IMG/VR virus record: IMGVR_UViG_3300024503_000485 | Coordinates: 62,001-126,000 of that record | Strand: one strand, 5' to 3' | DNA length: 64,000 nt | Shown: piece after piece, positions 25,120 through 33,006 of the stretch | Layout of the letters: every line of letters begins with the position of its first letter | Position numbering within the stretch: position 1 is the stretch's first letter | Position numbers and translations under genes: made by a program | The notes under the pieces: model-generated | What the model saw: only the letters and a program-made list of their open reading frames with translations | Told to the model about the DNA's origin: nothing | Databases searched by the model: none

Positions 25120-25713
25120 TTATGCTCCAAATGCAATTGCAAAAGCAGTTACACGAGAGTCTACGTAATCTTTTCTTGTTGCATGATTATTTGCAGTAGG
25201 AGATGCACCCAATGTTACTACTCCTGTTATAGCAGTAGTTCCAGATACTTCTAAATCTTCTACGCTTGCTATACCCTGCACGGTTAGTTCTCCGGAACTA
25301 TCTCCGGGACCAATGTTTACTGATTTAAAATTTGCGTCGGCTGGTTCTCTTAACCCAATATCAATATTGTCTATTGAGCCAACATCATTGGCACTTTGTA
25401 TAAAAACGTTTCCGTTAACAATATTGATATAAGGAGTTGATCCTTGTGCGACCGTAAAATCGCCGTCAATATTTAAAAATTCAAGTGTTCCTACACGAGT
25501 TAGATAGCTGTATCTAATAATTTCAGAAAGAGAAATTGTTGAGTCAGATGCATCAATAACTGGGATTCCGTTAATTTCAAAATCACCGGTTGTACTAATG
25601 TTTCCAGATACGGTAATTGAGCCGGTTACGATTAGGTCCCCCAGTTCATTGACTAGAAAACCCGGGCTTTTAAAGCCGCTTTTTGATTCAAATGGTATGT
25701 AAGTTACTGACAT
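25120..25713 (-). CDS. Tail fibre-associated structural protein
   Basis: Beta-helix-like G/V/T repeats; HATRKDYVD motif; ends AFAIAFGA; perfect TATAAATA at 25768-25761. Confidence 0.65.
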   Translation of the reverse strand: MSVTYIPFESKSGFKSPGFLVNELGDLIVTGSITVSGNISTTGDFEINGIPVIDASDSTISLSEIIRYSYLTRVGTLEFLNIDGDFTVAQGSTPYINIVNGNVFIQSANDVGSIDNIDIGLREPADANFKSVNIGPGDSSGELTVQGIASVEDLEVSGTTAITGVVTLGASPTANNHATRKDYVDSRVTAFAIAFGA

Positions 25714-25778
25714 AAAGCCCTCGCTATCCCCCCGACTTCAACTGCTACAAAGACTATGTGTATTTATACGCAGCTTGA

Positions 25779-26216
25779 TTAAACTCTTGTAAGGTCGTTT
25801 AGGCTGTAAAAATAAGTGGCACTAAAAATCAACTTACCGCCTAATAAAAGGCTGGAATTGTCGTAAGTAGAACCGTCTGGACTAGACGCTGGCTGCGCCT
25901 TTAACTGAAGTTTTGACTCTGAAATTGTAGCTGTAATTTCCACTAAATTTTCGTTGATATTAGTTCTGCCGTAGATTGTAATATCTGCTTTACCCGATCC
26001 TGCAACCACCAAACATTTAATCATTTCTTTTCTAATATTGCTAACATCAACAACAATAGTGTACTCTGCCGCGGCAAAATCCCCAACATACCATTCGTCA
26101 ATTAGGGTATCTGACGTAACTGGTATCCAAGGTCCTTTGTAGGAGAAATTAACTCCGTTTTGTAATCTTAGAGTATTTTTTAAACCACGTAGAAAGTATT
26201 TTGCAAAATTTAGCAT
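25779..26216 (-). CDS. Hypothetical virion protein
   Basis: 145 aa beta-rich; resembles the C-terminal domain of 51537-52424 (ITIYG vs VTAYG). Confidence 0.55.
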   Translation of the reverse strand: MLNFAKYFLRGLKNTLRLQNGVNFSYKGPWIPVTSDTLIDEWYVGDFAAAEYTIVVDVSNIRKEMIKCLVVAGSGKADITIYGRTNINENLVEITATISESKLQLKAQPASSPDGSTYDNSSLLLGGKLIFSATYFYSLNDLTRV

Positions 26217-26263: not shown

Positions 26264-28090
26264 TTATTTGTTAGCAATTTTAACTAGTTTGCCATATTCT
26301 GGCAAATATAGATACTCAATTTCGGACTGCTGTAAGGTCCACAAAGCATCTTCTAGTGTTTCGACTAACGGTTCACCGCCCAAGTTAAAGCTAGTATTGA
26401 ATAAAATAGGAATTCCTGTTTCTTCTTTAAATGCTTTAATTAGATTATAATAGTGTGTATTTTGCTCTTCTGTAACCGTTTGGATTCGACAAGTTCCGTC
26501 TACGTGAATAATACTTGGAATCTTTTCAGCAACTCCCGGTTGACAATTTACAGCATACATCATAAATGGGCTATCTTTCATCCCTCGAAGATCAAACCAC
26601 TCGTGTACATCATCTTGTAAAATTGTACCAGCAAATGGTCGGAAATATTCACGACGCTTAACCGTATTGACAAAATCCTTACCATCTTCAAATGTTGGAT
26701 CAAAGAGTACTGAACGATTTCCTAGGGCACGTGGACCGTTTTCCGAGCGTCCTTGGAAAATTGTAACAATATTTTTGTCACGTAACAGCTTAACAATATC
26801 TTTGTGTGTAGCGTCAGTAAGTTCTCCACCAAAATCTTCAACTTGTTTTTTAATTTCTTCGTTGGTGTAAGATTGTGGTGGTCCGAGATAAAGTGTTGTA
26901 CCTGGACGAATAGTTTCGTCATCTTGCATACCGTACCAGAACATGAGTGCTGCACCGATAGCAGTTCCAGCATCATTACTAATTGGTTCTACATAAATTT
27001 CAATACCGTCATTTTTTAGTGCTTCTAGGTAATGATAATTTGCTACACAATTAAGACCATATCCGCCGCTGATCACAACACGATTTTTTCCGCTTTTTTC
27101 AACAGCTTTTCTAATTAATTTTACTACTTGTTCTTGAGTTTGTGTTTGAACAGCATATGCTAAGTCTCGACGACTTTGCAGATACGTAACATCATCGGTT
27201 GGGTCTGCTGGGTACTCGTCAAGTTCGTCAAATAGTTGAGCATTAACCATTCCACTCATTGGATATTTTGGAACAATCACGTTTCTGTCTGTCAATGGAA
27301 TCCGTGATCTTTCATCAAATAATGGAGGAATTTTATCATTTGGTTTACCATACGGGAACAATCCCATGGTTTTGCCTGCTTCAATTGCAGAAAATCCACA
27401 ATACTCAGTTACTGCTTCATAGGCCTTAACAATACCTGCATGATCAGTAATCCATGCTTCATGGGTATCACCGTCTTCTCCTATTGCATTACTTGGAAAT
27501 TCTGGCGCATAATTAGCGGCTACTGCATCTCTTGCACCATAATGCTTATACAATGTTTTAAAATTTGCAGGATAATCGCAATCAACAATAGATTCGACTT
27601 CCCAAACCCAAATTCCGTTATCCCCGTAACTCATTGGATAAAATGTTCCTGCACCGTCAACAACTAACGAAACGGCATCTTTCCAACCCGAACGATAAAA
27701 TGCGCAGGCTGCGTGTAGTTTGTGGTGCATAAAACTTAGGTCAATAACCTGAGGATGGCGATGCAGGTCGGGAACTTTACGATTAATCAAACCTAATTTT
27801 CTTGCTAGGCCTGTATAAACGTCATCGCCTGTATAATCAACTTTACCTGCTGTTTCATACAAGTTCTGAGTATGTGCAATAATCAAATAATCTAACTTAT
27901 CTGTGTATTCTAAAATCTTTACCATTGAAGCAAACGGACCGCCATCGTATTTTTGACGACTTAGACGTTCTTCTTCAATGCTAAAAACAATTTCTCCATC
28001 TTTTAAAAGACACACTCCTGAGTTATGTCCTCGTGCAATAGCAGCAATCCAAACTGGTTTATCTGATTTACTAATTGATTTTACGGTCAT
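26264..28090 (-). CDS. O-carbamoyltransferase, CmcH/NodU/TobZ family
   Basis: EEERLSRQK, HHKLHA, VVDGAG, GKTMGL.PYG, SGGYGLNCVAN, DAGTAIGAA, GPRALGNRS, KRREYFRPFA, HVDGTCRIQTV, NTSFNLGGEPLV. Confidence 0.93.
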   Translation of the reverse strand: MTVKSISKSDKPVWIAAIARGHNSGVCLLKDGEIVFSIEEERLSRQKYDGGPFASMVKILEYTDKLDYLIIAHTQNLYETAGKVDYTGDDVYTGLARKLGLINRKVPDLHRHPQVIDLSFMHHKLHAACAFYRSGWKDAVSLVVDGAGTFYPMSYGDNGIWVWEVESIVDCDYPANFKTLYKHYGARDAVAANYAPEFPSNAIGEDGDTHEAWITDHAGIVKAYEAVTEYCGFSAIEAGKTMGLFPYGKPNDKIPPLFDERSRIPLTDRNVIVPKYPMSGMVNAQLFDELDEYPADPTDDVTYLQSRRDLAYAVQTQTQEQVVKLIRKAVEKSGKNRVVISGGYGLNCVANYHYLEALKNDGIEIYVEPISNDAGTAIGAALMFWYGMQDDETIRPGTTLYLGPPQSYTNEEIKKQVEDFGGELTDATHKDIVKLLRDKNIVTIFQGRSENGPRALGNRSVLFDPTFEDGKDFVNTVKRREYFRPFAGTILQDDVHEWFDLRGMKDSPFMMYAVNCQPGVAEKIPSIIHVDGTCRIQTVTEEQNTHYYNLIKAFKEETGIPILFNTSFNLGGEPLVETLEDALWTLQQSEIEYLYLPEYGKLVKIANK

Positions 28091-29022
28091 TCTTTTTTCC
28101 CTAATACGTGATTTACTACTAGTGTAGTTATGTCTTCGTTCATAGACATAATGTTTTCGTTTGATCTATTAATTCTTTCATCTGGGAAGATTCTAATAGG
28201 ATCGTATTCTCTGTTTACTTCTCCCATATCTAAAATATCAAAGTCAGGGCAGTTAGGGAACGATACGTTAATAGGGAAAGTCCCGCCAGTTACTACAACT
28301 GCTTCTTTATTCATAGAATATGCTAAATGCTGGCCCAAGCTATCGCAACCTAAAAACTTATCTGCATATTTGATAACTGCGGCCCACACTCTAATGTTTA
28401 CATTTTCTGGTACAGCAACTTCGTCTTTAAGTTTTGCATCAGAAAAATCAACTTTAAATTCGCTCATCATAATAACACCAAAGTCATTATTTTGCAATTT
28501 TTTAACAATTGATTTAACATCACGTAATTCAAAACTTCTTGAAGTTCTGTCAATTAGTGTTTCGTCGATGTATTCAATACCACGACCAAAAGGTTGAAAC
28601 ACAACTACTTTTTCTTTTTTAAGTTTTTTCTTAACATCACTGACCATTTGTCGGCCATATAGCATTTCTTCTTTGCTTAGACGCAGGGTTGGTCTAGGAA
28701 GATCTCTAATACCTTTATTGTTAACTTGAATGTCAAACGCTTGTGCAATTGAACATTGTTGATTGTAATATTCCCAAATTCTATATGGTTCTGTGGTAAC
28801 AATTTCGCGATCTTTTAAATAATCTTTAAAAAGATTTTTATGCCATACATCGTATGTTCTATTATCAAGGGTAGGATGACCCTTAAAAATATCTGTTCCA
28901 CCTTCGCAGACAATAATAAAATCTTTATCGTCTGATTCTTTTTCATATAGTTCAAAAGCAGGAATAGATGCAATCATTCTACCTGCTCCACCGTTAATAA
29001 AAAATGCTTTGGATCTGCTCAT
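28087..29022 (-). CDS. GT9 (heptosyltransferase)-like GT-B glycosyltransferase
   Basis: NGGAGR.IASIPA N-terminus, VVFQPFG, and AAVIKYADKFLGCDSLGQHLA...VVVTG GT9 signature. Confidence 0.75.
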   Translation of the reverse strand: MSRSKAFFINGGAGRMIASIPAFELYEKESDDKDFIIVCEGGTDIFKGHPTLDNRTYDVWHKNLFKDYLKDREIVTTEPYRIWEYYNQQCSIAQAFDIQVNNKGIRDLPRPTLRLSKEEMLYGRQMVSDVKKKLKKEKVVVFQPFGRGIEYIDETLIDRTSRSFELRDVKSIVKKLQNNDFGVIMMSEFKVDFSDAKLKDEVAVPENVNIRVWAAVIKYADKFLGCDSLGQHLAYSMNKEAVVVTGGTFPINVSFPNCPDFDILDMGEVNREYDPIRIFPDERINRSNENIMSMNEDITTLVVNHVLGKKE

Positions 29023-29105: not shown

Positions 29106-29750
29106 TTATAGAGCAGGTTGAATTGGATAAGGAATTTTCCAATGATCTACGCCAGCATACTTTGTTTCAATTGTTCTTAAAAACTCAGCATGTTGCTCAA
29201 TCTTTTCTAGCTGTTCTGGCAAATAGTTACCTGAACTTGCAGCTTCCTCAAAAGTTTTTAATTGAGACTTTTGAGATTCAAAGAACGAAGCTCTAGTGAT
29301 AGCATGGTTTCTATATCTTGGCATTATCCAAGAACTAGTTGCTGCATCCCATTTTGCATCGTTGGTGTAAAATGGTTGTGTGCAACAGCCGTGCTCGTCA
29401 TCATAATGATATTCGTACTTTTCACCTGTTGGAAGTGTTTCTACATAGTTTGGTACAGGACTTTGCTCATATTCGTGAGTAATATAAGATGCTAAAAATG
29501 GATTTTGATCAGCGTCGAGTACAACTTGAATATGACCCTCTGGGTCTAGATTCTCTTGAGCAATTTTCCATTTTTCTAATGCTTCTAAGGTTTCTTCACC
29601 TTCGTCCCAAGCAAACACAGCACCCGTAGCTTTTACTACTCTGATGAGCAGATATCTAGGGCCTGTATAAACACAATCAACCGTTCTGTTTAATTTTGTT
29701 GTGGTCTTGTATGGCTCATCTGGCAATACTGCTTTAAATGCTTTTCTCAT
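29106..29750 (-). CDS. Hypothetical protein, possible tail fibre assembly chaperone
   Basis: Start reassigned to MRKAFK (ATG 29750, AAGGA SD); C-terminus FLRTI...WKIPYPIQP resembles Tfa-type chaperone ends; follows adhesin-like genes. Confidence 0.5.
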   Translation of the reverse strand: MRKAFKAVLPDEPYKTTTKLNRTVDCVYTGPRYLLIRVVKATGAVFAWDEGEETLEALEKWKIAQENLDPEGHIQVVLDADQNPFLASYITHEYEQSPVPNYVETLPTGEKYEYHYDDEHGCCTQPFYTNDAKWDAATSSWIMPRYRNHAITRASFFESQKSQLKTFEEAASSGNYLPEQLEKIEQHAEFLRTIETKYAGVDHWKIPYPIQPAL

Positions 29751-29754
29751 GTTT

Positions 29755-30747
29755 TTAATCCTTAGGTATAAAGTTAATTCTAACTGCACCCATGCCGCCT
29801 CTCCAACCGTTATCTCTAACGTCACCGCATGGTGTTGCTGGATGTCCGCCTATGCCAATTGGCCAAAATGGTTGACAACCTTGTACATCGTAGCATCCGC
29901 ACGATCTAATTGTAGTATAACAAGTAGTCCATGGAATACCTCTAACTGGGCTTCGACTCATGCCGTTAAGTGCATTAATAAACTGGTGATATCCCATTCC
30001 TGACCATTCAGAGAATCCATTATCACCTTCTGTTCCGTATGAAACAACGCCACCATCGCAGGCAAATAGTCCTGGAGGAACAGCTACGTGGTAATGAGTT
30101 GAACATGGGCAGTTACCATAACCAGTCCAGAATGTTACACAGCTAAATCCGCCGCGTTTATTAATATCTCCGCCGTAGGCTTCTGCACAACAGCTACCAG
30201 TTCCTGATCCATAATTACAAATAATACCACAACATCCGTTTGAATAGTTGGTATTACAGAAATTACCTGCTACAAAGCAACAGAACATAACGCCGGATGG
30301 GTTACAGAATGTTGTGCCTCCACGGCCGCCTTGTGTACAAATACATCCGTTAGTTGCTGCACCAGTTAATGGAACACGGCCAAACCAGCATAAGCAGGTT
30401 GCTTCTGAACAACCACGGAAACATAGTGTATCAGCATTGTTACAGCTCTTTCCAATGTATCCACAGACATAACAGCCTGCAACTACGCAGAAACATTTTC
30501 TTGCCCATGCTCCTGGATTTCCTGGAACACCGTGTCCACAGCAGCACATACGTGCTCCTGAACCACCAGCACCCCAAACGTCCATGATAACACGACCTGT
30601 TTGGCAGGCTACCCAGCAAAATCCGTTTACATAGTTATTGTATTCAGCTGACGGTGTATAAAACCAAATTTGTCCTTTTTCAAGATTTGATTCATCCCAT
30701 TCAATTTGGTTTAATTTATTTTCTACTAATGTTTTTAAGGTAGCCAT
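29755..30747 (-). CDS. Cysteine-rich glycine-rich-domain protein 3 (adhesin-like)
   Basis: DVWGAGGSGARMCCC...GGMGAVRI; 34 Cys in 330 aa by manual count; start MATLKT. Confidence 0.75.
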   Translation of the reverse strand: MATLKTLVENKLNQIEWDESNLEKGQIWFYTPSAEYNNYVNGFCWVACQTGRVIMDVWGAGGSGARMCCCGHGVPGNPGAWARKCFCVVAGCYVCGYIGKSCNNADTLCFRGCSEATCLCWFGRVPLTGAATNGCICTQGGRGGTTFCNPSGVMFCCFVAGNFCNTNYSNGCCGIICNYGSGTGSCCAEAYGGDINKRGGFSCVTFWTGYGNCPCSTHYHVAVPPGLFACDGGVVSYGTEGDNGFSEWSGMGYHQFINALNGMSRSPVRGIPWTTCYTTIRSCGCYDVQGCQPFWPIGIGGHPATPCGDVRDNGWRGGMGAVRINFIPKD

Positions 30748-30748
30748 A

Positions 30749-31978
30749 TTAGTACGCATTGCCTCCGTCAGTTGGAATGTATTTAATTCTTACCATACCC
30801 ATACCACCTCTCATAGCATGGTCACGAACACCCGGACATGGGTGAGGTGCTGCACCAGGTACTCCGTAAGGAACATAATGCATACATCCTTCCATTTCGT
30901 AGCATCCGCAAGCACGGTCTGAACGCCAGCAACGAATATTTACTAGGTGTCCAGGTTGTCTAGATAAACCAGTTAATCCGTTTAGGTGATGTGGTTTAGT
31001 GCTTCCTGACCAGTTAACCATTGGTGAATCATTTTCAGTTGTGTATGTATATGATCCGCCGTCGTTGGCAAAAATACCCGGAGATGTAGTAATGTGATAC
31101 TGGAACATACATGTACACATTGGTAAACATCCTTGCCAGCTTACACAGCTAAATCCGCCACAGCAGTTAATATCGCCGCCGTAGCCGCAGGCTTGGAATG
31201 AAGCTGAACTGGGCCAATCACTTGGATTCCAGTTACAGATCATACCGCAAGCAGAGCGAGAAATATCACACATATTGTGTTGTGTACTTAATTTTGTTCC
31301 GCACCATGCGTTGGTTATGTAGCAAGAGTATGGTGATTTATCATCAATACAATAACTAATACCACCACGACCACCCTGAGAACATAAACAGCCATTTGAT
31401 GCACCTGCTGCACAGCAAATACCCCAGTTAGCGCAGCCTTGGCCGCCATAACGTCCACATTGGCCGCCTTCAAATTGAATGCCGCCACCGGCATTGCCGT
31501 ACGGATCGCCTGCCATTGGGTTTCCGCCACCTTGGCCCCATCCCCACGGATTGTTGCCTCTAAATGATTCTTGTCTATTTGGTTCTTGTCCGCCTTCCCA
31601 TACAGGTTTAGGAGCACAACCAAACCAGCATACGCAGGTTGCTTCCGAACATCCTCTAAAACAAAGTGCTGAAGAGTTGTTGCATGAACGACCTACATAC
31701 CCGCAAACATAGTTTGAAGGACATACACAAATACATTTTTTTACATAGGCTGCTGGGTTTCCAGGTAATCCCACACCGCAGCAACACATTTGTGCGCCTG
31801 ATCCAGACGCACCCCAAATTTCAATAATTGCTTTACCGCATCCTGGTGGTTTCCAACAGAAACCATTACAGAATGATGTGTACATATTGCCGTCTGAGTA
31901 AACCCAGATACGACCTTTTTCTAAGTTATCTTCCCAGGCTAATTCACGATTACCTAATAATTGTGTTAATGTTGACAT
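30749..31978 (-). CDS. Cysteine-rich glycine-rich-domain protein 2 (adhesin-like, with Gly-rich insertion)
   Basis: EIWGASGSGAQMCCC...GGMGMVRI; 40 Cys in 409 aa; start MSTLTQ by TAATG overlap. Confidence 0.75.
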   Translation of the reverse strand: MSTLTQLLGNRELAWEDNLEKGRIWVYSDGNMYTSFCNGFCWKPPGCGKAIIEIWGASGSGAQMCCCGVGLPGNPAAYVKKCICVCPSNYVCGYVGRSCNNSSALCFRGCSEATCVCWFGCAPKPVWEGGQEPNRQESFRGNNPWGWGQGGGNPMAGDPYGNAGGGIQFEGGQCGRYGGQGCANWGICCAAGASNGCLCSQGGRGGISYCIDDKSPYSCYITNAWCGTKLSTQHNMCDISRSACGMICNWNPSDWPSSASFQACGYGGDINCCGGFSCVSWQGCLPMCTCMFQYHITTSPGIFANDGGSYTYTTENDSPMVNWSGSTKPHHLNGLTGLSRQPGHLVNIRCWRSDRACGCYEMEGCMHYVPYGVPGAAPHPCPGVRDHAMRGGMGMVRIKYIPTDGGNAY

Positions 31979-33006
31979 TAGTAACCGCCTCCTAGTCTTG
32001 AGCAATTCTGTTCATATATTCCAGAACCTCTATATGTTAATCTAATTGCACCGTGGCCGCCTCGTCTGCCGTGGTCACGAACGTCTGGACATGGAAACGG
32101 AGGTCCACCGGCTACACCATACGGCATATGAACTTGACAACCGTTTTGTTCATAACATCCACATGATTGAGTGCCTGAATAGCAAGTGTGCCATGGCATA
32201 CCGCCACTTGGCCATTTACCTACGTTGTTAATTGCATATTGTTGATTGTAGTTACCCATTCCTGACCATTCAGAATATTCTGGGTCTGCATCGTTAATAT
32301 ACGATAAGTAACCACCTTGTGTACTATACACGCCAGCAGCAAAAGGAATGTAAACTTCAGTTTGGCAAGGACATGATGGATAGCAACCTTTAAAGTGTAC
32401 ATATCCAACGCAACCGCAGCAGTTAATGTCGCCACCGTAGCCGCAGGCAATCCATGCGCCTGGACATTGGTTACACACAATTGCGCAGTTATCGCAACCT
32501 GTTGGAGAATTATAACGTGTTGTACAGAATGTACAATATAGATAACAGCAATAAGCAGATGTTGAAGTTGAGCATATAGCAATGCCTCCACGTCCGCCTT
32601 GAGCACACATACATCCGCCGGTATAACCGCAAAGGTCTCGAGCATTACCCCATCTTAGATATGACGGGTCGCTGCATCCTGAAAAACATAAGCTGTGAGA
32701 GTTACAAGACATTGATGGACAAGCACAAATATAGCTGCCACAAAAAACTGCAATAGTCTTTTTAGAATATGCCGGAGCATTTCCTGGAAGGCCAAAGCCA
32801 CAACAGCACATACGAGCGCCGCTGCCTGCTGCACCCCACATCTCAATAGTTAGTGTTCCACAACCAGGTGATGTCCAGCAGTACAACATGTCAGATCTAA
32901 TACATGAATACATGCCGGTGGGTGAGACCGTCCAGACCTTGCCTTTTTCAAGATTATCCTGATTGGCTGTAATCTCTCTTGTAGATAATAGGTCTGATAA
33001 TTTCAT
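31978..33006 (-). CDS. Cysteine-rich glycine-rich-domain protein 1 (adhesin-like)
   Basis: EMWGAAGSGARMCCC...GGHGAIRL; 37 Cys in 342 aa. Confidence 0.75.
   Translation of the reverse strand: MKLSDLLSTREITANQDNLEKGKVWTVSPTGMYSCIRSDMLYCWTSPGCGTLTIEMWGAAGSGARMCCCGFGLPGNAPAYSKKTIAVFCGSYICACPSMSCNSHSLCFSGCSDPSYLRWGNARDLCGYTGGCMCAQGGRGGIAICSTSTSAYCCYLYCTFCTTRYNSPTGCDNCAIVCNQCPGAWIACGYGGDINCCGCVGYVHFKGCYPSCPCQTEVYIPFAAGVYSTQGGYLSYINDADPEYSEWSGMGNYNQQYAINNVGKWPSGGMPWHTCYSGTQSCGCYEQNGCQVHMPYGVAGGPPFPCPDVRDHGRRGGHGAIRLTYRGSGIYEQNCSRLGGGY

What the first reader, a model, noticed from the sequence alone, without database searches (positions are those of the whole stretch)
28960..29022. GT9-like enzyme has Arg where the catalytic Asp normally sits
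Seen: the N-terminal loop reads NGGAGRMIASIPA while the C-terminal nucleotide-sugar motif (DSLGQHLA) is intact. Established: GT9 enzymes such as WaaC/WaaF use the Asp of the G-(L/I/M)-G-D motif as general base. Inference: losing the base fits a more acidic acceptor such as a Cys thiol or phosphate, supporting the S-glycosylation idea; alternatively it is a pseudo-enzyme.
Basis: partly seen in the sequence, partly recalled or inferred. Interest (0 to 1): 0.6.

Follow-up and report, generated by a model that had tools for sequence, protein, structure and literature searches.

The report
Phage heptosyltransferase-like enzyme with Arg–Glu pair
A marine cyanophage gene next to its tail-fibre genes encodes a sugar-transferase of the heptosyltransferase (GT9) fold in which the usual catalytic aspartate is replaced, across hundreds of phage relatives, by an arginine that always travels with a conserved glutamate, so it looks like a working enzyme with a rebuilt active site, not a dead one or a proven cysteine glycosylase.

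Summary
ORF 28087..29022 (-) encodes 311 aa. It starts ...FFINGGAGRMIASIPA and keeps DSLGQHLA at residues 227-234. The AlphaFold2 model (pLDDT 97) matches solved GT9 enzymes at Z 19-23, against 11.7 or less for other GT-B folds. Profile alignments put R15 on WaaC Asp13, R162 on Lys192 and D227 on Asp261.

The Arg is a family trait. In 317 distinct relatives position 15 is R in 299 and K in 16. The family is almost only viral.

- R15 never occurs without E78 (E-P-Y motif). Every sequence that lacks E78 also lacks R15. Further invariant acids exist (E119, D158). So a general base is not clearly missing.
- The Arg is equally invariant in the 23 of 39 well-flanked loci that have no Cys-rich neighbour.
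- About half of the neighbours' cysteines sit in conserved columns, and their model resembles the Pam3 tail-fibre protein.

A pseudo-enzyme is unlikely, because the donor site is conserved and many relatives sit beside ADP-heptose pathway genes and a NodU-like carbamoyltransferase. In this window the carbamoyltransferase start overlaps the GT stop.

Best reading: an active, phage-specific GT9-like heptosyltransferase in a tail-fibre module, with an Arg-Glu pair replacing the Asp base. The acceptor is unknown. It is a new variant of a known kind.

The parts
28087..29022 (-). GT9-like (GT-B fold) glycosyltransferase, 311 aa, PHROG 8954
28978..28992 (-). Gly-rich beta1-alpha1 loop G11-G12-A13-G14-R15. 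R15 (28978..28980) sits at the position of WaaC Asp13.
28783..28791 (-). E78-P79-Y80 motif just after N-domain strand 4. P79 and Y80 are invariant. E78 co-occurs with R15 and is the candidate relocated base or salt-bridge partner.
28534..28551 (-). D158...R162-S163. R162 aligns with WaaC Lys192. D158 is a family-specific invariant acid.
28666..28668 (-). E119, a family-specific conserved acid at the start of the linker helix. It is lost together with D158 in the Lys15 sub-clade.
28321..28344 (-). Donor motif D227-S-L-G-Q-H232-L-A. D227 aligns with WaaC Asp261.
26264..28090 (-). NodU/NolO-like carbamoyltransferase, 608 aa. Its ATG overlaps the GT stop codon (ATGA).
29106..29825 (-). 239-aa protein upstream of the GT (phrog_9740). 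Proteins at this position in related loci match the S-SSM7 protein, which carries a Phage_tail_APC domain.
29755..33006 (-). Three paralogous Cys/Gly-rich proteins (29755..30759, 30749..32005, 31978..33006). They are fibre- or adhesin-like.
25120..26216 (-). Two small ORFs (145 and 197 aa) that follow the carbamoyltransferase in many related loci.

Best explanation
The gene encodes a catalytically competent member of a large, essentially phage-only clade related to family GT9 heptosyltransferases.

Shown:
- GT-B fold closest to WaaF, WaaC and TibC.
- A C-terminal nucleotide-sugar site that is conserved (R162 for Lys192, D227 for Asp261, S228, H232).
- The classical base (Asp13) is replaced by R15 inside a Gly-rich loop (G-G-x-G-R).
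- R15 always co-occurs with E78 of an invariant E-P-Y motif that follows N-domain strand 4.

Inferred:
- R15 and E78 form a pair across the ends of strands 1 and 4. This is the same geometry as the His-Asp dyad of GT1 UGTs (from my own knowledge).
- Glu78, or one of the other family-specific acids E119 and D158, takes the proton from an ordinary hydroxyl acceptor. Arg15 orients the acid and helps hold the substrate.
- The donor is most likely ADP-L-glycero-beta-D-manno-heptose.
- The transferred sugar is then O-carbamoylated by the NodU-like enzyme, whose start codon overlaps the GT stop.
- Because the gene sits in tail-fibre or virion modules in unrelated phages, the acceptor is most likely a virion (fibre or adhesin) protein or a glycan on it. 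The acceptor is the weakest step.
For: Fold and family:
- Fold.
- Remote homology to GT9: 34 of 76 relatives hit PF01075. The profile hits WaaF and WaaC. hhalign probability is 95-97%.
- R15 on Asp13.
- Role of WaaC residues: D13A, D261A and K192A cut activity 4688-, 2027- and 926-fold (PMC5713226). TibC Asp110 is its base (PMC4358343).

Conservation:
- R15 in 71 of 76 sequences; E78 72, D158 75, R162 75, D227 75, H232 75 of 76.
- 299 R/E pairs of 317, and no R without E.
- Secondary structure puts R15 in the first turn of helix 1 (13-29) and E78 two residues after strand 73-76.

Donor:
- In P-SSM2, S-SSM7 and S-CAM3 the gene is followed by genes whose best NCBIfam hits are heptose-7-P kinase (3e-43), heptose-1-P adenylyltransferase (1e-30), a HAD phosphatase and ADP-heptose 6-epimerase (5e-62).
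- 16 of 39 well-flanked IMG/VR loci carry at least 2 such genes, and 19 of 39 carry the carbamoyltransferase.

Virion context:
- Tail-fibre genes, a tail-assembly-chaperone-like neighbour and fibre-like Cys/Gly-rich proteins.
- Between gp15 and gp16/gp17 in a T4-like contig.
- Beside terminase and long fibre-like genes in the Lys15 sub-clade.

Viral restriction: at least 593 IMG/VR stretches, against 13 loci, all on MAG contigs, in 185,579 species genomes.
Against: - No biochemical data exist.
- I could not read the model's coordinates, so the R15-E78 contact rests on fold topology and co-occurrence only.
- A tree-aware test finds only 3-5 independent changes. All go in the same direction, but the sign test is not significant.
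- An Arg next to a Glu lowers its pKa, which is not ideal for a base.
- The window's own record has no PfkB kinase and no SIS isomerase. It has only one cytidylyltransferase-like ORF elsewhere. ADP-heptose would therefore have to come from the host or from the missing part of the record, which CheckV rates 62% complete.
- The window protein itself does not reach any Pfam threshold.
- No acceptor was identified. Gene position in a structural module is weak evidence for a virion target.
Confidence: 0.5

Rival explanations
1. One reading: the enzyme is an S-glycosyltransferase that puts a sugar on cysteine thiols of the neighbouring Cys-rich proteins. Arg15 stabilises a thiolate, so no base is needed.
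For: - Arg at the base position, at the N-terminus of a helix, could lower a thiol pKa (chemical reasoning).
- Cys/Gly-rich proteins (8-13% Cys) lie a few genes upstream in this window and in S-CAM3, S-SSM7 and P-SSM2, and in 16 of 39 well-flanked loci.
- Roughly half of their Cys are not in conserved columns.
Against: - R15 is equally invariant in 23 of 39 loci without any Cys-rich ORF, and in contigs whose neighbouring proteins hold 2.7% Cys or less.
- Cys-rich ORFs correlate with the carbamoyltransferase, not with the GT.
- The conserved Cys columns and the Pam3-fibre / ALK glycine-rich-domain-like fold point to structural Cys.
- Invariant acids E78, E119 and D158 would disfavour a thiolate if they line the same pocket (inference).
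- From my own knowledge: known S-glycosyltransferases (SunS, ThuS) are GT-A enzymes, and the GT-B S-glucosyltransferase UGT74B1 keeps its His base.
Confidence: 0.08
2. Arg15 and the Gly-rich loop bind an anionic group of the acceptor: a phosphate, a pyrophosphate-lipid, or a carboxylate such as an acidic sugar. The target would be a host envelope precursor or glycolipid rather than a virion protein. The anionic group is either the nucleophile or assists catalysis.
For: - G-G-x-G-R at a helix N-terminus is a typical anion-binding arrangement.
- It resembles the G-loop of MurG, which is thought to bind the lipid I diphosphate (from memory, not tested here).
- GT9 enzymes normally act on lipid A-Kdo.
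- Cyanophage 'LPS gene' clusters have been proposed to alter the host surface (PMC3037559).
Against: - The gene sits in fibre or virion modules in unrelated phages.
- The family-specific residues are mostly acidic.
- No membrane-association feature was looked for or seen.
- From my own knowledge: marine Synechococcus LPS is reported to lack Kdo and heptose.
Confidence: 0.15
3. It is a non-catalytic GT9-fold protein: a nucleotide-sugar-binding or assembly factor, or a structural subunit, like the GT9-fold subunit of plant NDH.
For: - The canonical base is absent.
- GT9-fold subunits of chloroplast NDH are among the structural hits (Z 18-19), which I take for non-enzymatic subunits (own knowledge).
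- The window's record lacks a full heptose pathway.
Against: - Near-invariance of the donor-site residues R162, D227, S228 and H232, and of about 20 other positions, over sequences down to 24% identity.
- Repeated linkage to ADP-heptose synthesis genes and a sugar carbamoyltransferase.
- The start of the carbamoyltransferase overlaps the GT stop.
Confidence: 0.1
4. The clade has changed chemistry: a retaining (front-face) transfer that needs no base. The Gly-rich loop plus Arg/Lys would hold the donor's distal phosphate, as in GT4, GT5 and GT20 enzymes.
For: - Loss of Asp together with gain of G-G and a basic residue in the beta1-alpha1 loop.
- K can replace R (16 of 317).
- Retaining GT-B enzymes have Gly-rich loops at this place (from memory).
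Against: - The rest of the site (D227, and R162 for Lys192) is that of the inverting GT9 enzymes.
- The strict R15-E78 link is not explained.
- There is no direct evidence.
Confidence: 0.07
5. It glycosylates phage DNA, by analogy with the T4 glucosyltransferases, with Arg15 contacting the backbone.
For: T4 alpha- and beta-glucosyltransferases are GT-B enzymes. Phages often place NDP-sugar genes next to DNA glycosyltransferases (own knowledge).
Against: - No thymidylate-synthase-like hydroxymethylase in the record, although the record is incomplete.
- The gene's position is among fibre and virion genes.
- The closest folds are GT9, not the T4 enzymes.
Confidence: 0.03

Closest known systems
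LPS heptosyltransferases WaaC (HepI) and WaaF (HepII), CAZy GT9, PDB 2H1H / 6DFE / 1PSW
   Same: - GT-B fold (Z 19-21).
- C-terminal D-[ST]-G-x-x-H motif, with D227 on Asp261.
- A basic residue at the Lys192 position (R162).
- The beta1-loop-alpha1 segment has the same register, including the I-P-A-L/F helix.
- Probable ADP-heptose donor, judged from neighbouring genes.
   Different: - Asp13 is replaced by Arg15.
- The loop is G-G-x-G-R instead of S-x-x-G-D.
- The model shows fewer N-domain strands (4) than I recall for WaaC.
- Invariant E-P-Y, E119 and D158 are specific to the family.
- Phage-encoded, and below Pfam thresholds.
- No lipid A-Kdo acceptor is expected.
Bacterial autotransporter heptosyltransferases TibC / AAH (BAHT), PDB 4RAP / 4RB4
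   Same: GT9-like fold (Z 20.0). ADP-heptose-dependent. A protein acceptor is the function I consider most likely here.
   Different: - TibC keeps the base (Asp110).
- TibC has about 90 extra N-terminal residues with an iron finger and forms a dodecamer.
- The phage protein aligns only to TibC residues 92-391 and has Arg at the base site.
GT1 plant UGTs with the His-Asp catalytic dyad (from my own knowledge)
   Same: A residue after N-domain strand 1 is paired with an acid after N-domain strand 4. These are the positions of R15 and E78. This is a 'works like' comparison only.
   Different: A different GT family. The pair is His-Asp, not Arg-Glu. In UGTs the strand-1 residue is the base, whereas here the acid would have to be.
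Virion glycosylation in mycobacteriophages and chloroviruses (from my own knowledge)
   Same: Virus-encoded glycosyltransferases that decorate virion proteins.
   Different: Those enzymes belong to other GT families and use other sugars. No heptose or carbamoyl-sugar decoration of a phage virion is known to me.
GT9-fold subunit of chloroplast NDH (7WFF chain a, 7F9O chain 6)
   Same: GT9 fold (Z 18-19).
   Different: A plant complex subunit that I take to be non-enzymatic (own knowledge). No conservation link to sugar-nucleotide genes.

Membership tests
CAZy GT9 / Pfam PF01075 heptosyltransferases | GT-B two-domain fold, closest to solved GT9 structures | tested here: met
   Model pLDDT 97. 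3TOV Z 23.1, 1PSW 21.3, 4RB4 20.0, 2H1H 19.2, against 11.7 or less for other GT-B families.
CAZy GT9 / Pfam PF01075 heptosyltransferases | Sequence match to PF01075 above its gathering score | tested here: not met
   No hit for the window protein even at E 10. 34 of 76 relatives give hits at E 0.01 or better, best E 1e-9. Only profile-profile comparison links them (95-97%).
CAZy GT9 / Pfam PF01075 heptosyltransferases | C-terminal D-[ST]-G-x-x-H donor motif (WaaC Asp261) | tested here: met
   D227-S-L-G-Q-H232 aligns with V-D-T-G-L-S-H of WaaC and WaaF. D227 and H232 are each present in 75 of 76 sequences.
CAZy GT9 / Pfam PF01075 heptosyltransferases | Conserved Lys192 near the anomeric carbon | tested here: inconclusive
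   The position is filled by R162 (75 of 76), a conservative change. Functional equivalence was not tested.
CAZy GT9 / Pfam PF01075 heptosyltransferases | N-terminal G-D catalytic Asp (WaaC Asp13, TibC Asp110), reported present in all heptosyltransferases (PMC5713226) | tested here: not met
   R15 is at that position. Position 15 is R in 299, K in 16, C in 1 and S in 1 of 317 relatives, and never D.
CAZy GT9 / Pfam PF01075 heptosyltransferases | ADP-heptose donor and inverting transfer | not testable with these tools
   Indirect evidence only: ADP-heptose pathway genes lie next to orthologs.
BAHT (TibC / AAH) protein heptosyltransferases | N-terminal extension with iron finger, and a dodecameric ring | tested here: not met
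   The 311-aa protein aligns to TibC residues 92-391 only. There is no extra N-terminal domain. Oligomer state was not tested.
BAHT (TibC / AAH) protein heptosyltransferases | Catalytic Asp110 | tested here: not met
   Arg is at the homologous base position.
Peptide S-glycosyltransferases (SunS / ThuS type) | GT-A (GT2) fold; Cys acceptor in a peptide | tested here: not met
   The fold is GT-B. Cys acceptor use was not testable.

The most novel reading that the evidence does not exclude
Marine T4-like phages decorate their tail-fibre adhesins with carbamoyl-heptose. They would do so with a phage-only GT9-derived clade whose rebuilt active site (Arg-Glu pair in a Gly-rich loop) makes an unusual linkage (S-, carboxyl- or phospho-linked) or uses a non-canonical, possibly retaining, mechanism. 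This would be a new glycosyltransferase family and a new kind of virion modification that bears on host range.
Probability: 0.15. Interest if true: 0.8.

Novelty: new variant of a known kind. Interest (0 to 1): 0.55.

Why it matters
- Cyanophage 'LPS genes' have been noted since 2005-2010 with no known role. PMC3037559 asks whether they are functional or 'stuffer DNA'.
- This analysis ties one of them to a large clade: 2711 protein clusters matched in the word search and at least 593 IMG/VR stretches.
- The clade is nearly phage-only, sits in fibre or virion modules, is linked to ADP-heptose synthesis and a sugar carbamoyltransferase, and has a defined active-site change.
- That gives a directly testable hypothesis: virion or fibre heptosylation, with mass shifts of +192 and +235 Da.
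- It also gives a natural experiment on how an inverting GT-B enzyme can work without its canonical Asp.
- If the acceptor is the adhesin, the modification could affect host recognition in some of the most abundant ocean viruses.

Tried and rejected
- Pfam, NCBIfam and single-sequence PDB searches of the window protein gave nothing usable. The only lead was a 16-bit heptosyltransferase III hit on the C-terminal motif.
- The search for related loci with the 76-sequence alignment failed because no stretch was conserved enough. A 14-sequence sub-alignment worked.
- The local profile comparison aligned only the C-domain. Global and N-terminal-only runs were needed to place R15.
- D/N10 as an alternative base is rejected. 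It is D in 41, N in 23 and T/S/E/Q in the rest of the 76 sequences, and N in the window protein.
- The tree-aware test of R15/E78 coupling had too few independent events (3-5) to reach significance. I report the coupling as suggestive only.
- DNA glycosylation: no hydroxymethylase-like gene in the record.
- Literature searches for phage heptosyltransferases, cyanophage carbamoyltransferases and glycosylated fibres found no study of this family. A term search of the 2010 paper's held supplementary files for P-SSM2 and S-SSM7 gene tags found nothing. Its virion proteomes are from S-SM1 and two other genomes the passage does not name.
- Complex prediction was not run. I do not claim a specific binding pair, and gene neighbourhood alone is not reason enough.
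- Reads tools were not used.
Full report
**What is there.** The finding lies in ORF 28087..29022 on the minus strand. The ORF encodes 311 aa, starts with ATG, and has GGAG 6 nt upstream. The window is part of a 219-kb virus record (G000:C1:62001-126000). Its closest named relatives for this gene are T4-like cyanophages: S-CAM1 and S-CAM3 at 54% identity, S-SSM7 at 50%, and P-SSM2 at 40%. The N-terminus reads K-A-F-F-I-N-G-G-A-G-R-M-I-A-S-I-P-A, so the Arg is residue 15 (codon 28978..28980). D-S-L-G-Q-H-L-A is residues 227-234.

**Is it GT9-like?** Direct scans do not show it.
- There is no Pfam hit even at E 10. PHROG 8954 has unknown function. The only lead is a 16-bit NCBIfam hit to heptosyltransferase III over residues 202-248.
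- A single-sequence PDB search found nothing.

The link appears with more sensitive methods.
- The exhaustive representative search gave 412 relatives.
- I aligned 76 full-length relatives, 24-49% identical to the query, as alignment A1. Of these, 34 hit PF01075 at E 0.01 or better (best E 1e-9).
- The A1 profile hits WaaF (1PSW, E 0.005) and WaaC.
- hhalign of A1 against E. coli WaaC/WaaF/WaaU gives 95% probability locally and 97% globally.
- AlphaFold2 on A1 gave a model with pLDDT 97 and pTM 0.94.
- Foldseek and VIA-align rank only GT9-fold chains at the top: Veillonella GT9 3TOV (Z 23.1, rmsd 3.5, 280 aligned), WaaF (21.3), TibC (20.0), WaaC (19.2) and the GT9-fold NDH subunit of plants (18-19). 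The next GT-B families, UDP-GlcNAc 2-epimerases and GT1 enzymes, reach 11.7 at most.

**Does Arg sit at the base position?** Yes, by three lines of evidence.
- The global profile alignment pairs residues 3-26 with WaaC 1-24, so G14-R15 falls on G12-D13.
- An alignment restricted to the first 60 residues gives the same register (E 1.5e-4).
- The structural alignment begins at model residue 3 = WaaC residue 1.

The local alignment pairs R162 with Lys192 and D227 with Asp261. According to the HepI review, D13A, D261A and K192A lower activity 4688-, 2027- and 926-fold, and Asp13 is present in all heptosyltransferases (PMC5713226). TibC uses the homologous Asp110 (PMC4358343).

**The Arg is a family trait.**
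- In A1, G11, G12 and G14 are each present in 75 of 76 sequences, and R15 in 71 of 76. The others are K (3), C (1) and S (1).
- S-CAM3, S-SSM7 and P-SSM2 have G-G-A-G-R. Aeromonas phage HJ05, 25% identical, has G-G-L-G-R.
- The 79 loci from IMG/VR in which the gene was called read [DNST]-G-G-[AS]-G-R wherever the N-terminus was called correctly.
- Pooling 317 distinct sequences, position 15 is R in 299, K in 16, C in 1 and S in 1, and never D.
- The family is large and almost purely viral. The word search found 2711 clusters and the IMG/VR scan at least 593 stretches. In 185,579 species genomes there are 13 loci, all on MAG contigs.

**A partner residue.** The family has conserved acids of its own: E78 in an E-P-Y motif whose P79 and Y80 are invariant, plus E119 and D158.
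- The four A1 sequences that lack E78 are all among the five that lack R15.
- I pulled relatives of these variants. That exposed a Lys15 sub-clade with D or N at position 78 and hydrophobic residues at 119 and 158.
- Over all 317 sequences the pairs are R/E 299, K/D 7, K/N 5, K/E 4, C/N 1 and S/K 1. R never occurs without E.
- On a tree built without these two columns there are 5 changes at each site and 3-5 independent contrasts. The partner site changes in the same direction in 2-3 of them and never in the opposite direction. The sign test cannot reach significance with so few events. I treat the coupling as suggestive.
- Topology supports a contact. R15 is in the first turn of helix 13-29, after strand 5-9. 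E78 lies two residues after strand 73-76. In Rossmann-like GT-B N-domains strands 1 and 4 are neighbours. The His-Asp dyad of GT1 UGTs uses these same two positions (established knowledge, not tested here).
- I could not read the model's coordinates, so no distance was measured.

**Surroundings.**
- The GT stop codon and the start of a 608-aa NodU-like carbamoyltransferase overlap as ATGA.
- Upstream lie a 239-aa protein, three paralogous Cys/Gly-rich proteins, two small ORFs and giant fibre-like ORFs.
- The same order is found in S-CAM3, S-SSM7 and P-SSM2: tail fibre, two small genes, Cys/Gly-rich genes, a gene of about 240 aa, the GT, the carbamoyltransferase. There it continues into further genes.
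- The best NCBIfam hits of those further genes are heptose-7-P kinase (3e-43), heptose-1-P adenylyltransferase (1e-30), a HAD phosphatase, and ADP-glyceromanno-heptose 6-epimerase (5e-62). There is also a cupin. This is essentially an ADP-heptose pathway.
- The S-SSM7 protein at the position just upstream of the GT carries a Phage_tail_APC domain.
- Among 39 IMG/VR loci with at least 6 kb on both sides, 19 have the carbamoyltransferase, 16 have at least 2 heptose-pathway genes, 16 have a Cys-rich ORF, and 9 have none of these.
- In a T4-like contig the gene lies between gp15 and gp16/gp17. Members of the Lys15 sub-clade lie beside terminase and long fibre-like genes.
- The window's own record lacks a PfkB kinase and a SIS isomerase. 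It has one cytidylyltransferase-like ORF elsewhere. CheckV rates the record 62% complete.

**The Cys-rich neighbours.**
- Each has 24-40 Cys. Between 15 and 21 of them fall in columns shared by at least 6 of 11 proteins that are only about 21-23% identical.
- In a 43-sequence alignment eight Cys columns are nearly invariant.
- The AF2 model is only moderate (pLDDT 65). Its two hits at E 0.001 or better are the cyanophage Pam3 fibre protein. Weaker hits include the ALK glycine-rich domain and the Bxb1 tail tip.
- These proteins therefore look like fibre or adhesin proteins with structural cysteines.
- Cys-rich ORFs go with the carbamoyltransferase (14/19 against 2/20). They do not go with the GT, whose Arg is unchanged in the 23 loci without them. 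The loci are related to each other, so these counts are not independent samples.

**Interpretation.**
- Most likely this is a working enzyme. The donor half is that of a GT9 heptosyltransferase, and the gene is repeatedly linked to ADP-heptose synthesis.
- What changed is the acceptor side. The Asp base is replaced by Arg in a Gly-rich loop, and the Arg is paired with an invariant Glu.
- I favour a relocated base (Glu78, or E119/D158) acting on a hydroxyl acceptor, with carbamoylation of the sugar afterwards and a virion fibre protein or its glycan as the target. Confidence is about 0.5 for the enzyme and mechanism frame, and much lower for the acceptor.
- The rivals are an anionic acceptor bound by Arg15 (0.15), a non-catalytic protein (0.10), Cys S-glycosylation (0.08), a retaining mechanism (0.07) and DNA glycosylation (0.03).

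**Novelty.**
- No paper in the searchable library treats this family. Public annotations call it hypothetical or, automatically, 'ADP-heptose:LPS heptosyltransferase'.
- It fails two GT9 membership features: the Pfam threshold and the catalytic Asp. I therefore file it as a GT9-related, phage-specific variant, not as a GT9 member.
- Interest is moderate to good. The substitution is real, ancient and widespread, and it gives a concrete handle on the unexplained 'LPS genes' of cyanophages. The chemistry and the acceptor remain unproven.

Noticed in passing
window 28087-28090 (-): The GT stop codon and the carbamoyltransferase start codon overlap as ATGA. This suggests translational coupling of the two enzymes.
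   Followed up: yes
window 29755-33006 (-): Three tandem paralogs with 10-11% Cys (34-40 Cys each) share E-x-W-G-A-G-G-S-G and M-C-C-C-G motifs. About half of their Cys are in conserved columns. The moderate AF2 model resembles the Pam3 fibre protein and the ALK glycine-rich domain. They are likely gp38-like adhesins with many disulfides or metal sites.
   Followed up: partly
L010-L089 (IMG/VR loci): Cys-rich ORFs, either several of about 250-330 aa or a single one of 600-1450 aa, co-occur with the NodU-like carbamoyltransferase (14/19 against 2/20 loci). The carbamoyltransferase also shows a weak HypF-type Kae1-like domain hit, and HypF carbamoylates a Cys thiol (from my own knowledge). Whether the phage enzyme acts on Cys or on a sugar is open.
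   Followed up: partly
L001:6998-8137, L002:6989-8236, L003:6998-8110: The orthologs in S-CAM3, S-SSM7 and P-SSM2 are 370-415 aa. They carry a C-terminal extension of 60-100 aa, with no Pfam hit, that the 311-aa window protein and its closest relatives (311-313 aa) lack.
   Followed up: partly
L007:6548-7486 and L007:1726-2781: In a T4-like metagenomic contig the family member lies between gp15 and gp16/gp17. A protein of 43% Ser+Thr lies 4 kb upstream, next to fibre genes. It is a possible O-glycosylation target.
   Followed up: no
L090-L102 (GTDB genome contigs): All 13 hits in 185,579 species genomes are on MAG contigs, including archaeal (Methanobacteriota, Woesearchaeota) and Marinimicrobia bins. 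These are probably viral contigs binned into MAGs.
   Followed up: no
model me28a66192692 against PDB 7WFF chain a, 7F9O chain 6, 9GRX chain 1: A subunit of the chloroplast NDH-PSI supercomplex has a GT9 fold (Z 18-19). It is a possible precedent for a non-enzymatic GT9-like protein.
   Followed up: no
window 29755-29825 (-): The 239-aa ORF called from GTG at 29825 overlaps the end of the first Cys-rich gene by 71 nt. The PHROG match starts at residue 24, so its true start is probably an internal ATG (residue 26).
   Followed up: no
L003:11027-11371 and L001:10930-11250: Genes annotated 'phosphoheptose isomerase' in P-SSM2 and S-CAM3 start with a HAD-type D-x-D-G-T motif. The P-SSM2 gene, the one scanned, matches capsule-biosynthesis HAD phosphatases, not SIS isomerases. 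The isomerase step may be done by the adjacent cupin.
   Followed up: partly
G000:C1:56066-56353 (outside the window): This is the only cytidylyltransferase-like ORF in the record (267-aa frame). No PfkB kinase, SIS isomerase or thymidylate-synthase-like gene was found in the 219-kb record.
   Followed up: partly
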